A DNA stretch of 64,000 nucleotides from Octopus bimaculoides. Taxonomy: Eukaryota. Below are positions 6,653 to 41,189 of the stretch, piece after piece (the stretch's first letter is position 1; every line of letters begins with the position of its first letter). The position numbers and the translations under genes are program-made. The stretch covers positions 52,460,856 through 52,524,855 of the forward strand of contig NC_068990.1 of the NCBI RefSeq assembly GCF_001194135.2, written 5' to 3'. A model generated the notes under the pieces. That model searched no databases. It was given only the letters and a program-made list of their open reading frames with translations, and was not told the DNA's origin.

Positions 6653-6778
6653 TTAATAAACATTGGTTCACAGTACACATACGGAACTGAAGACCATGTA
6701 GAATTTTTATGTGTGGTTTCCAAAGAATGCCCTAACATTGTCAATGGACAAGAAAATGAACCTACTGATAGAGCAAAG
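6653..6778 (+). CDS. KCTD5: KCTD5/insomniac-like BTB protein, penultimate coding exon (126 bp, phase 0/0)
   Basis: ttcattttcAG|...gcaaag|GTAAGA. Encodes [42 protein letters not shown], matching the recalled human KCTD5 [42 protein letters not shown]. Both other frames contain stops. Confidence 0.95.
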
Positions 6779-9499
6779 GTAAGAATTGTTTTTGCTTATT
6801 AGTTCTTATTTTCAGTTAATTCCTTCTAAATTGGTAACTTAATTAAACAATAGAATATTAACTCTCACAGGTTCTACTGAATGAGTTTGTGGAATGGATC
6901 TAGATAACATTTGTAGATTGTCAAATTCCTAAAAATAAACATGTTTATTCCATGGAATATAATTTTATCAGCTGTCATGTAAATGGTATTAAAAGAAATC
7001 TTTGGATTATTTGGCTCCATCATTTCTTGTTAGACAAGCAAATAAATTTCTATGTATCAATTAGAGTGTTGAATGAAATATAGGTGTGCACAATCATATT
7101 TAAATGTTCATGTACACTTGGAAAAGATTTACTGCAGAAATTGTTTCAAGAGAAAAATTCTCCTTATAGACAAGATGCCCAAAAAACACCAGAGTCAGGA
7201 TAAGCAAATCATATGATAAATTAAAATGGGGAAAAAATAAAGAAAACTGCACTCAAACAAAAAAAAAATTCCTTTACTGTTTGTATGGGAACAAGTTTCA
7301 TTTTATGACTACAGTCTCCAGTAAATAACTTTTTTACATTTAAAAAAAATTTTTTTTTATGGCTTTGAAAGAGGAGAAACATAAAACCCATGATAGCTTT
7401 TCAAAGGGAGGAAGGGGAAGCATCTTTAAACAGGAGACCTGACCTGTATGTTTACAACAATGGGCACTCTACTAAAGTTACACAAGGGTCAGGTAGTAGC
7501 ATGAACAGAGTGACCACTCAAAAATAAGCATGATCACTCTAACAAACCACAACGCAATTTCCATTTATTAAATTTCATTCACAATATTATTACTATGCAG
7601 ACTTTTAAGCTAACTTCTATGGAGGGCTAATTAGGCCTGCAGCTGAAAACTAAAGAGAGCTAAATAGCATAACTATAATACATCTATAATAACTATATGC
7701 CCTGGTGGTGTTTGATCAGAAGTTAAGGACAGATGAGAATTAACTCTATAATGCAATCATTCTATTGTTCCAGTCCCAAGTTGAATTCCAATTGTTGGTC
7801 AATTTGTCCAAAAGTTCTTATCTTGACGTAAAAGTAACAAAGAGAATGTCATTTATCTGACAAACAAGCAAGATGGCATGGATCAGCTTTACTGCTAGAA
7901 ATTGCAAACCAAATGCTTTTAAATCAGATCTCAATGCTGGATGTTCAAGAACCAAATGAAGGGCAGATTTTCAATCTTGGAATCATCCTGATTCCAAAAA
8001 GGTATAATATGTCTATGTAGGGAAAATGTAGACTGAGATACAGGGGTCCCAGAGGAACAGACAGTATTTCGCTTTTAATAATATAGAAGATATTTGGTCA
8101 AGGTTTTTAAACCCCAAATTTACAAAAGGCCATTGGTTAACCACAGAGTTATGGCTTCACCCATATGAAAAAGAATCAATAAACTCAACATAAATGATAG
8201 GGAACAAAAACAAAATTCTGACTTCATTTCATTTGATACAAAGTTAGGTTGTAGAAATTGATGGGACTGATCTCAGAATATTTGCTGATTTTTGCAAGAT
8301 GAATGGTAAAAAGTGAAGTTAAGCCATTGTAGAACTTGAACTTAAAATACCTAAATGTAGTGAACTGAGCATTGTGTGTGGCATTCAGTACAGGTCTTTA
8401 CCATTTCTGCCAGTTCTCTTGTTTCATGAATTCTAAGACAAATTTTTATTGAAGCTCTTAACCTGAGTTCACTGATGAAGTATTGTGACATGGTAACAAA
8501 GTATAACTATACTATCTCATACTCTAATGAGGTATACAGCAGAGATCTAACCAAAAGTGTGAGACAAACAGCATCCTAAGCTAAAATACCTTCATTACAT
8601 AAGAGTAAAATCATCATCATGAATAATAAAAGGAAATTGAGAAAAGAAACCATTTTTAAAAAATCAGGTAATTTCTTTAGAAGAAAGTCTGCTGTTGTTG
8701 CTAGTACAGACACAAAGAAGAAATGGTGTCAGTACAGAATTGTCATTTGTGGGAAGATTGTTGTGGCAGGGACTGTGACAGCAGAAGGACAAGCAATGAA
8801 TAAGGGACAAGTGTAAGAATATTGAAGCTGATTGTGTTAGAATTAATCAAAGAGAATTTAATATTGGGATTTTGCTGTTTAACTTCATGTGCCTTCCCTG
8901 ACAAACATTCCACTGTCTTTTTTTTCTTTTTGCTACAACATACCACTTTCTTTTTTTTTTCTGTTTCTTTTATTTGAGTCAATCAAGTAAAGCATGTTCC
9001 AAAATCACTGCAAAACCAATTTCTTGGAATGCCAACTGTTTTTCACAGATCTCAAGGAACTTCTATTGCTACACTTCACTTGAATTTTTGTTGTTTATTC
9101 CCTCTAATCTACCACCACCATTGATATCTCTTTTGTGGGACATGCCCACACTCTGTTCTGTTCAGCTCAATACTAAGGTAGGGTGTGCAATATTAATTTG
9201 TACAAAGACATGGCTTATCAACACACTTGTGATTTGGTGGACCTCCAGCTGTGCTATAGGTCAGTTTTGATAAATGCTGGTTTGAAAATTTCAATAATAA
9301 CAAAACAAAAATGATTATTAATCAATGGAAACTTTGTAAATATTGTACTAATTAAGAGAGTGATGTCCTCTTTTATCTGTAGGGCATTGCTACCTCCTAA
9401 TTTTCTCCTACCACTCCAGCCAATGTCTGTAACAATTACAATGGAAATATTACATGGTCTAAGGAGAGTCATTATGCCAATATAATTAGCACATGCATT

Positions 9500-9762
9500 G
9501 GTTCATTTCCAGAAACACAACATACATTTGGGAGACCTCTAGGAGCATAGTGGAAAGGCTAAATGAGCACAGGAGAAAATATAATGACAAGAAACAGTAC
9601 TCCATACTCTATCAACATGCCAAAAACCAACATGGTAGCACACTGGGCTGAATTGACATTTGCATTTTGTCCAAACACCCAAAGGATCCATCACTTAGAC
9701 AAATACAAGAGTACATCCTCATAAACGAAACATTACCCATACTAAGTAGGAAATACACATAG
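9500..9762 (+). mobile_element. Penelope-like GIY-YIG endonuclease remnant
   Basis: From 9523 reads YIWETSRSIVERLNEHRRKY...SILYQHAKNQHG...*IDICILSKHPKDPSLRQIQEYILI, a degenerate YIG/R/EH GIY-YIG pattern with one internal stop. Confidence 0.72.
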
Positions 9763-9859
9763 AAGGTAGAGTTACCCCAATACCAAAGATACCACCTACA
9801 GAATGGTACATTCGTAAGTAGGTTCATTTGTAAGTAGGCAGTCAAGTAGATAGGTAAGT

Positions 9860-39469: not shown

Positions 39470-40700
39470 TCCAATCATCTCAGTACTTTGCCATCTCTTT
39501 CATGAGTTTCAACATCCTGATATCAGCCTTCATTACCTCATCTGTTTTTCTGGATCTCTCTCTTACACTGGCTCCACTTATGTAAATGATTGGTGCATTT
39601 TTATACAACTGTTCGCATCCACACACATCATATGCCCATACAAATGCAGTCTTATCGCTTGTGCACTACATCTAATTTGTACTCTGTCATTCATATACAC
39701 TGACATTGCATATCTAACAGAACAAATCTTCTGCATTCAGGGCCAATATCTCACTACCATGTAGCACTGCAGTTAGTACACGAGCATCATATAGTCTACC
39801 TTTCACTTTGAGAGCTATCTATCATCTCTAGGGACATTCCTGGGCATTTGAGAACATCTATTTCTTCTACACTCTTAACATTTATTGTTCTTATGATTCT
39901 ACAACAAACAAACTTTACGAACTCTGTTAATCAGCATATCTTTTGTGCATATTTTTGTGTCAATAGTCTGCATTAAGTACAGCATGTGGAATTTCTACCC
40001 ACTTCTTTTGTACATATTGAGCAAGGTCACTTCTCTGATGGTAGTAGGATCCTATCATTTTTTCTACTTACTAAAACGTTAATCTTTGCGAAGTTAAATT
40101 TGAGACCCATTGAATACAGGTTTTGCTTCTACGCCTGGAATTCCTTCTCTAATCCTACTACCTATTTAGCTACAATGAGATCATCAGTATATAGTATTTC
40201 TCATAAGCATCCAGCCTTAAACTCACTTGTTATGGTCAGGAGAACCATGATAAATAGGTGGACCCCTATCTGCAAGCTAAATTTGTCATTGTATTCATTG
40301 CTAACTCTCATGTACATGATTTGTACAACCCTCACAAACCAATCTGTTTATTTCTAGTTTCCTCAGCAACCAGCACATCACCAAGTATGAGACTGCTAAT
40401 GGCCTTCTTCAAATCAACAAATGTTAGATCCAGCAGCTTACTGCTCTTAGCCAAGTTCTCACTAGGAATATGAGATCAGTTCTCCTTCCCGGCAAAAAAC
40501 TTAACTGCATCTGATGTAGGTTAACTCTCACTCTCTAATCAATTGAGCTGAAACTCTGTGACTTTCATGACCTGATCTGAAAGTGCTCAAGCATGAACAA
40601 GGAAGTAAAAGTACAGAGAGTTATCGCCTTAGCTAGCAACAAAAGTATTCTTTTACAGACTGAAGGGCAGATCGTAAGGTGTCTACAAATGATGAAAAAT
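39470..40700 (-). mobile_element. Degenerate RTE LINE RT to C-terminus
   Basis: Minus-strand remnants DQVMKV, LPGRRT..IFLVR, LTFVDLKKA, EILYTDDL and RLYDARVLTAVLHGSE. Confidence 0.8.
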
Positions 40701-41080
40701 GTTGTCACATGATAGTAAAACATGGGCAATGCAAACAGATGTATGAAAGCTGGAGCAAAATGAAGTATGTTCTGCAGGATGTGTAATATCAGGGAAACTA
40801 AGGAGGTTAATCTCAAGAGGCTGAACTGCACAAAGGAGATGATAAACAACTATAACAAATGAGTAGATGCTATGTTAGAGAAGACCTAGCCAACCCACAC
40901 AAACATGGAAGAGTAAACATAAAATGATGATGATAATGATGATGATGTGTCTCTTAACCATATGCAACAACATGGAATCATATTCAAACGAATCTTCTCT
41001 AATAAGAGGAAACTTCTCTCCCCAACACATCTCATGGCCCCATAGAGAAAAAAAAATGTAAAAAAATCTCAAAACTGTAC

Positions 41081-41189
41081 CTTCTTCTGCTAAATCTTTA
41101 TTTATAACTAATTTGCCATGTCGTAAGTAATTTAAAATTGGACCAAAGTAAGTTGGGTCTCGATCAATTAGGAATGCTCCAATATCATC
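41081..41189 (-). CDS. KCTD5: KCTD5/insomniac-like BTB exon (109 bp, phase 0/1)
   Basis: Minus strand: atttctttcttcctcAG|GATGATATTGGA...GCAGAAGAAG|GTACAG. Encodes [36 protein letters not shown](G), nearly identical to the recalled human KCTD5 BTB core. Phase fits the 21269 acceptor. Confidence 0.97.

What the first reader, a model, noticed from the sequence alone, without database searches (positions are those of the whole stretch)
6653..41189. One KCTD5/insomniac-type gene is split into convergent halves on opposite strands
Seen in the sequence: the BTB exons (41189-41081, then 21269-21178) splice in frame on the minus strand. The C-terminal exons (6653-6778, then 11326-11355) splice in frame on the plus strand, pointing toward them. 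The four exons are non-overlapping parts of a single protein, and neither half has its complementary exons in the window. Established knowledge: KCTD5/Inc is a Cullin-3 adaptor and a sleep regulator in Drosophila. Opposite-strand exon joining by trans-splicing is known for Drosophila mod(mdg4), a different BTB class. Inference: the most probable cause is a mis-oriented scaffold block. The alternatives are a real intragenic inversion, two reciprocally truncated paralogs, or cis-inverted trans-splicing in a cephalopod neuronal gene, which would be new.
Basis: partly seen in the sequence, partly recalled or inferred. Interest (0 to 1): 0.8.

Follow-up and report, generated by a model that had tools for sequence, protein, structure and literature searches.

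The report
Mis-oriented scaffold splits octopus KCTD5 gene
The octopus KCTD5 gene looks split onto opposite strands here, but almost certainly only because a 64-kb piece of this short-read Octopus bimaculoides assembly was inserted backwards; three other octopod genomes carry the same gene intact on one strand.

Summary
The window is Octopus bimaculoides GCA_001194135.2, CM046610.1:52,460,856-52,524,855. It holds four KCTD5 exons with AG/GT borders. Exons A and B (residues 68-134) are on the minus strand. Exons C and D (residues 167-217 plus stop) are on the plus strand.

The missing middle exon M lies 43 kb left of the window on the plus strand. Exon 1 lies 28 kb right of it on the minus strand.

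The six exons join into a 654-nt reading frame. Its 217-aa product is identical to O. sinensis KCTD5, with 6 synonymous and 0 non-synonymous differences. In gapless loci of O. sinensis and Argonauta hians all six exons are colinear on one strand. O. vulgaris is also colinear, but its assembly lacks exon C.

Against O. sinensis, window 20999-46887 aligns in reverse, while the block holding M, C and D aligns forward. That block (window -43022 to 20895, 63.9 kb) is bounded on both sides by 100-N gaps. The scaffold ends at the B|M break run into TA/TG microsatellites. Flipping the block restores the gene.

Verdict: a scaffolding orientation artefact (about 0.93), which also explains RefSeq's two half-models. 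Trans-splicing, paralogs and a real inversion are not supported. Low interest.

The parts
41081..41189 (-). KCTD5 exon A (residues 68-104, BTB domain)
   Evidence: Translation and AG/GT borders. 107/109 nt identical to O. sinensis exon at L002 42739-42847.
21178..21269 (-). KCTD5 exon B (residues 104-134, end of the BTB domain and linker). RefSeq XP_052827155.1 reads through its donor into the intron (VRCFLYFK*).
   Evidence: 92/92 nt identical to O. sinensis L002 56001-56092.
6653..6778 (+). KCTD5 exon C (residues 167-208, C-terminal domain)
   Evidence: 124/126 nt identical to O. sinensis L002 62741-62866.
11326..11355 (+). KCTD5 exon D (residues 209-217 plus the stop codon)
   Evidence: 29/30 nt identical to O. 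sinensis L002 66200-66229.
1..20895 (+). The part inside the window of the 63.9-kb block that is inverted relative to other octopods. The whole block is window -43022 to 20895, which is L004 9893-73810 and CM046610.1:52,417,833-52,481,750. It carries exons M, C and D.
   Evidence: Window 5561-17870 aligns forward to O. sinensis L002 61610-72600, and L004 9897-11591 (which contains exon M) aligns forward to L002 59911-61610. The rest of the gene aligns in reverse.
1..5560 (.). Right end of a 46.9-kb stretch specific to O. bimaculoides (about 11 kb of it N) inside the M-C intron. It is repeat-rich and holds no coding ORF of note.
   Evidence: There is a clean junction at O. sinensis L002 61610 on both sides (L004 11591 and L004 58476 = window 5561).
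20896..20995 (.). 100-N gap that forms the right boundary of the inverted block. The orientation switch lies in 17871-20998.
   Evidence: Homology to the O. sinensis B-M intron (L002 56275, reversed) starts 3 bp after the gap. The flank ends in a TG/TA microsatellite that is also present in O. sinensis.
20996..47016 (-). 26-kb scaffold piece between two 100-N gaps. It carries exons A and B and is colinear with O. sinensis in the same orientation as exon 1.
   Evidence: Window 20999-46887 corresponds to L002 56275 back to 36064. L003 3583-80908 is colinear with L002 778-56275.

Best explanation
O. bimaculoides has one ordinary, intact, single-copy KCTD5 gene with six coding exons and a 217-aa product. 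In the assembly ASM119413v2 it is represented incorrectly. That assembly was made by placing 2015 short-read scaffolds into chromosomes with Hi-C. The gene fell across three old scaffold pieces: exon 1; exons A and B; exons M, C and D. Hi-C put the pieces in the right order but inserted the 63.9-kb M-C-D piece backwards. As a result the 3' exons appear on the opposite strand, convergent with the 5' exons. No biological mechanism is needed. Shown here: the block is inverted relative to three other octopods, its boundaries are gaps, and flipping it restores the gene. Inferred: that the 100-N gaps are Hi-C joins, and that the real O. bimaculoides chromosome is colinear.
For: 1. The window is 100% identical to GCA_001194135.2 CM046610.1. 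That assembly is Hi-C data integrated with the earlier shotgun assembly (PMC9068888). It has 713,915 contigs (PMC10700109), and a later paper says many of its gene annotations are fragmented (PMC10925132).

2. The gapless O. sinensis locus L002 has exon 1, A, B, M, C and D all on one strand. So does Argonauta hians L005. O. vulgaris L001 has exon 1, A, B, M and D on one strand.

3. Window 20999-46887 aligns to L002 in reverse. L004 9897-70785 (window -43018 to 17870) aligns forward, at 85-92% identity.

4. The block is bounded by 100-N gaps at L004 9793-9892 and window 20896-20995. All other gaps nearby have variable, estimated sizes. Homology to O. sinensis runs to within 3-5 bp of the gap edges and ends in TA/TG microsatellites that are also present at the orthologous O. 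sinensis sites.

5. The six exons concatenate to 654 nt. The product is identical to O. sinensis XP_029640702.1, with 6 synonymous and 0 non-synonymous differences, against about 10% divergence in the introns.

6. RefSeq has two exactly complementary half-models on this chromosome. XP_052827155.1 covers exon 1, A and B plus intron read-through. XP_014776166.2 covers M, C and D starting at an internal Met.
Against: No long read, Hi-C map or O. bimaculoides transcript could be examined here, so the true orientation in this species is inferred, not seen. A real inversion with breakpoints inside repeats would also leave gaps at its ends in a short-read assembly. Window 17871-20895 has no counterpart in the O. 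sinensis or O. vulgaris loci I hold, so the far end of the block could not be anchored. The neighbouring UBAP2 fragment does not match the Argonauta arrangement even after flipping the block, so a single flip may not repair the whole neighbourhood.
Confidence: 0.93

Rival explanations
1. O. bimaculoides, or the sequenced male, carries a real and recent 64-kb inversion that cuts KCTD5 in the B-M intron. That would leave a BTB-only 5' gene and a promoterless 3' fragment encoding the C-terminal domain, which amounts to loss of function.
For: The assembly and both RefSeq half-models are as this reading would predict. Breakpoints lying in repeats would be unassemblable and would appear as gaps.
Against: Both halves show 0 non-synonymous and 6 synonymous changes against O. 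sinensis, so any inversion would have to be very recent. Both boundaries coincide with 100-N gaps. The scaffold ends stop in microsatellites shared with O. sinensis, not at novel junctions. From general knowledge, Hi-C orientation errors for pieces under 100 kb are common, while inversions that split a deeply conserved single-copy gene are very rare.
Confidence: 0.04
2. The opposite-strand arrangement is real, and a full-length mRNA is produced by trans-splicing of two separate pre-mRNAs, as in Drosophila mod(mdg4).
For: Only that the donor of exon B and the acceptor of exon M are intact and the halves are complementary.
Against: This reading first requires the real inversion above. All three other octopods make the protein from colinear exons. 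The 3' half has no sign of its own first exon; RefSeq simply starts it at an internal Met in M. No O. bimaculoides transcript evidence was available.
Confidence: 0.005
3. The two halves are reciprocally truncated paralogous copies of KCTD5.
For: None beyond the existence of two gene models.
Against: No exon is duplicated in the 154 kb of O. bimaculoides sequence examined. The introns and flanks of each half are orthologous to adjacent, non-overlapping parts of the single O. sinensis gene, and the split falls inside one intron. The database holds only these two O. bimaculoides proteins in the relevant clusters.
Confidence: 0.005

Closest known systems
KCTD5 (human) / Insomniac (Drosophila): the KCTD2/5/17 subfamily of BTB Cullin-3 adaptors
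   Same: The rebuilt 217-aa protein aligns over residues 17-217 with human KCTD5 structures 8u7z and 3drx (E = 1.5e-97). It has the T1-type BTB_2 domain at residues 29-117. It is identical to the RefSeq protein named KCTD5 in O. sinensis.
   Different: Nothing of note. The apparent split is a property of the assembly, not of the gene.
Local orientation errors in Hi-C-scaffolded short-read assemblies
   Same: A sub-100-kb piece bounded by fixed-length 100-N gaps is in the right place but reversed. It breaks one gene into two complementary annotated fragments.
   Different: Not confirmed here with reads or a contact map. The neighbouring UBAP2 model suggests more than one affected piece.
Drosophila mod(mdg4) trans-splicing of exons encoded on opposite strands
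   Same: Only the superficial picture: a BTB-encoding 5' part and 3' exons on the other strand.
   Different: In mod(mdg4) the opposite-strand layout is established in the genome itself (my own knowledge, not tested here). Here the layout is contradicted by three related genomes and sits on scaffold joins.

Membership tests
KCTD2/5/17 (KCTD5/Insomniac) family | N-terminal T1-type BTB domain (Pfam BTB_2, PF02214) | tested here: met
   PF02214 E = 8.7e-23, 80.9 bits against a cut-off of 21.4, residues 29-117.
KCTD2/5/17 (KCTD5/Insomniac) family | KCTD5-type C-terminal domain following the BTB domain, alignable end to end with KCTD5 | tested here: met
   phmmer against PDB: 8u7z and 3drx (human KCTD5), query residues 17-217, E = 1.5e-97. 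KCTD17 and KCTD9 match only over the BTB domain.
KCTD2/5/17 (KCTD5/Insomniac) family | Pentamer formation and Cullin-3 binding | not testable with these tools
   Needs biochemistry. Inferred only from the full-length alignment to human KCTD5.
Scaffold mis-orientation artefact | Orientation switches coincide with scaffold joins or gaps, not with contiguous sequence | tested here: met
   The left switch is at the 100-N gap L004 9793-9892. The right switch is within window 17871-20998, which holds the 531-N and 100-N gaps.
Scaffold mis-orientation artefact | The block is internally colinear with orthologous loci, and flipping it restores exon order, strand and reading frame | tested here: met
   The six exons give a 654-nt ORF whose product is identical to O. 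sinensis KCTD5.
Scaffold mis-orientation artefact | Independent long-read or contact-map evidence from the same species shows the opposite orientation | not testable with these tools
   The HiFi assembly PRJNA1076263 exists but is not in the collections available here.
mod(mdg4)-type opposite-strand trans-splicing | Opposite-strand exon layout verified in genomic DNA | tested here: not met
   The layout is seen only in the gap-bounded block of one short-read assembly. O. sinensis, O. vulgaris and A. hians are colinear.
mod(mdg4)-type opposite-strand trans-splicing | Separate transcription unit for the 3' exons, and a mature mRNA joining both | not tested
   No O. bimaculoides transcripts were retrievable. 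No octopus product derived from a Logan run assembly turned up in the searches or in the four clusters read.

The most novel reading that the evidence does not exclude
The 64-kb inversion is real in the sequenced O. bimaculoides male, either fixed or polymorphic. It would sever KCTD5 between the BTB domain and the C-terminal domain. The animal would then either lack functional KCTD5/Insomniac or rescue it by joining two transcripts from opposite strands.
Probability: 0.04. Interest if true: 0.65.

Novelty: not a real feature. Interest (0 to 1): 0.06.

Why it matters
The main value is as a caution and a correction. In ASM119413v2, KCTD5 is annotated as two fragment proteins, XP_052827155.1 and XP_014776166.2. 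Anyone using this annotation for orthology, expression counting or single-cell work on sleep and neuronal genes would mis-count or miss the gene. If the inversion were real, it would be a natural knockout or a trans-spliced form of a conserved sleep regulator in a cephalopod, but the evidence points firmly the other way.

Tried and rejected
- Looked for exon M and exon 1 in the window on both strands with human, Sepia and octopus queries. Neither is there.
- The look-up of O. vulgaris P0099 failed. Its sister isoform P0122 worked.
- The second homology search, with the C-terminal half, appeared to return only proteins of 58-145 aa, and none was from an octopus.
It was then confirmed through an exact cluster look-up as XP_014776166.2 and fetched.
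- Searched for O. bimaculoides transcript-derived proteins from Logan run assemblies. None was found. P0350 is a molluscan (non-octopus) N-terminal fragment from a Logan assembly.
- Tried to anchor the far side of the block and the UBAP2 neighbour in O. sinensis and O. vulgaris by blastn and tblastx. Only a non-coding fragment that looks like a SINE, plus low-complexity hits, came back. It therefore stays undecided which of the two gaps in 17871-20998 is the switch, and whether UBAP2 is also mis-oriented.
- Considered paralogs and rejected them: no exon is duplicated, and the introns are orthologous to one gene.
- Considered that the M-C distance of 49.5 kb was a mis-join. Both junctions lie inside contiguous sequence at the same O. 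sinensis base, so an insertion is real, although its length is uncertain.
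Full report
**Observation**

On the minus strand, 41189-41081 and 21269-21178 join in frame to [67 protein letters not shown]. On the plus strand, 6653-6778 and 11326-11355 join to [51 protein letters not shown]. All four have AG|exon|GT borders, and the last ends in TGA. 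tblastn with cephalopod KCTD5 proteins finds these exons at E = 1e-21, 1e-15 and 4e-26, and finds no other KCTD5 exon on either strand. None of the N gaps touches an exon.

**Identity of the window and of the gene**

The window is 100% identical to Octopus bimaculoides GCA_001194135.2, chromosome CM046610.1, bases 52,460,856-52,524,855.

RefSeq annotates two half-proteins here:
- XP_052827155.1 is 142 aa. It covers exon 1, A and B, then reads through into the intron as VRCFLYFK.
- XP_014776166.2 is 81 aa. It starts at an internal Met of the middle exon M and continues through C and D.

Exon M is in the assembly on the plus strand at L004 9995-10090, which is 42.9 kb left of the window start. 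Exon 1 is on the minus strand 27.7 kb right of the window end.

The six exons concatenate to a 654-nt ORF. Its 217-aa product is identical to O. sinensis KCTD5 XP_029640702.1, with only 6 synonymous and 0 non-synonymous differences. It carries Pfam BTB_2 at residues 29-117 and aligns end to end with human KCTD5 structures (E = 1.5e-97). The split falls between the BTB domain and linker (residues 1-134) and the C-terminal domain (residues 135-217).

**Comparison with other octopods**

| Species and locus | Gaps in locus | Exons found on one strand |
|---|---|---|
| O. sinensis L002 (PacBio-based) | none | exon 1 10001-10201, A 42739-42847, B 56001-56092, M 60009-60104, C 62741-62866, D 66200-66229 |
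| Argonauta hians L005 | none | all six exons |
| O. vulgaris L001 (ONT-based) | none | exon 1, A, B, M and D; its assembly lacks a 1.28-kb stretch that contains exon C |

**Anatomy of the discordance**

Against O. sinensis, O. bimaculoides is colinear from upstream of exon 1 to window 20999, which corresponds to L002 56275 in the B-M intron. The orientation then flips. L004 9897-11591 (with exon M) and window 5561-17870 (with C and D) align to L002 59911-72600 in the opposite sense.

The inverted block is window -43022 to 20895, 63.9 kb in all. It is bounded on the left by a 100-N gap at L004 9793-9892 and on the right by the 100-N gap at window 20896-20995. Every other gap nearby has a variable, estimated length (10 to 6644 N), the kind I would expect mate-pair scaffolding to leave (my own knowledge).

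Homology to O. sinensis runs to within 3-5 bp of both gap edges at the B|M break. Both ends stop in TA/TG microsatellites that sit at the orthologous O. sinensis positions, L002 about 56236-56295 and 59866-59956. The 3.6 kb between them in O. sinensis is repeat-rich and simply absent from the O. bimaculoides assembly.

Flipping the block gives exon 1-A-B-[gap]-M-C-D on one strand.

The within-block gap at 14665-15175 is colinear and correctly sized. So is the gap at 26675-26956, in the A-B intron outside the block. The gap at 32149-32450, also in the A-B intron, is colinear but over-sized by about 250 bp.

**Provenance**

The assembly was produced by integrating new Hi-C data with the 2015 shotgun assembly (PMC9068888). 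It has 713,915 contigs (PMC10700109). The authors of a later HiFi assembly state that many of its gene annotations are fragmented (PMC10925132). That the 100-N gaps are Hi-C joins, and that pieces under 100 kb are often mis-oriented, rests on my own knowledge and was not tested here.

**Interpretation**

The best explanation (about 0.93) is that one scaffold piece was placed in the right position but the wrong orientation. The gene itself is ordinary.

- A real, very recent inversion (about 0.04) cannot be formally excluded without long reads. It would need both breakpoints to fall in the unassembled repeats and to have left no coding decay.
- Trans-splicing first requires that inversion. Three genomes that encode the protein colinearly make it unnecessary.
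- Reciprocally truncated paralogs are excluded. No exon is duplicated, and each half's introns are orthologous to adjacent parts of one gene.

**Limits**

- No O. bimaculoides reads or transcripts were accessible.
- Window 17871-20895 could not be anchored, so I cannot say which of the two gaps in 17871-20998 is the switch.
- The UBAP2 neighbour does not match the Argonauta arrangement even after the flip. Either more pieces are mis-oriented here, or there is a real lineage difference.

Noticed in passing
L001 62445-62448 (O. vulgaris OX597823.1), compared with L002 61829-63113: The O. vulgaris chromosome assembly lacks a 1.28-kb stretch that holds KCTD5 exon C, although the flanks are 97-99% identical to O. 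sinensis. This explains the truncated or frameshifted O. vulgaris models CAI9728954 and CAI9728953; the latter uses a cryptic exon after M and reads exon D in the wrong frame. Whether this is an assembly dropout or a real deletion is unknown.
   Followed up: partly
L004 11591-58476 (window -41324 to 5560): O. bimaculoides has 46.9 kb of extra sequence (about 11 kb of it N) in the M-C intron, which is 2.6 kb long in O. sinensis. It enters at a single clean point (L002 61610), and both junctions lie inside contiguous sequence. It is probably nested repeat insertions; the true length is uncertain.
   Followed up: partly
L004 1-5252 (-), compared with L005 50143-52885 (-): In Argonauta a 1165-aa UBAP2 gene lies tail to tail with KCTD5, 7.3 kb after its stop. 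In O. bimaculoides only a 282-aa UBAP2 N-terminal fragment model sits beyond the left 100-N gap, with its 5' end facing exon M. This does not match Argonauta even after flipping the KCTD5 block. It suggests further mis-placed pieces or a real rearrangement.
   Followed up: partly
window 47017-47116 and window 46887-64000 (continuing to about 67974): There is a third 100-N gap. About 21 kb of O. bimaculoides sequence in intron 1 stands where O. sinensis has an unrelated 7.2 kb (L002 28862-36064). This is either repeat turnover or another inserted piece.
   Followed up: no
window 33119-34090 (+): A 323-aa ORF with a reverse-transcriptase domain (RVT_1, E = 1.5e-28) lies in the A-B intron. It looks like a LINE fragment and coincides with the strong GC skew at 32-36 kb. 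The region is shared with O. sinensis at about 90% identity.
   Followed up: partly
window 56030-57040 (+): A 336-aa ORF with PIF1-like helicase domains (E = 1.9e-50) lies in KCTD5 intron 1. It is probably a Helitron-type transposon remnant.
   Followed up: no
window 14110-14586: A 229-bp unit occurs in 2.1 tandem copies just before the 14665 gap. Related copies occur at many places in the octopus loci, so it is SINE-like. This is probably why the contig ends here.
   Followed up: no
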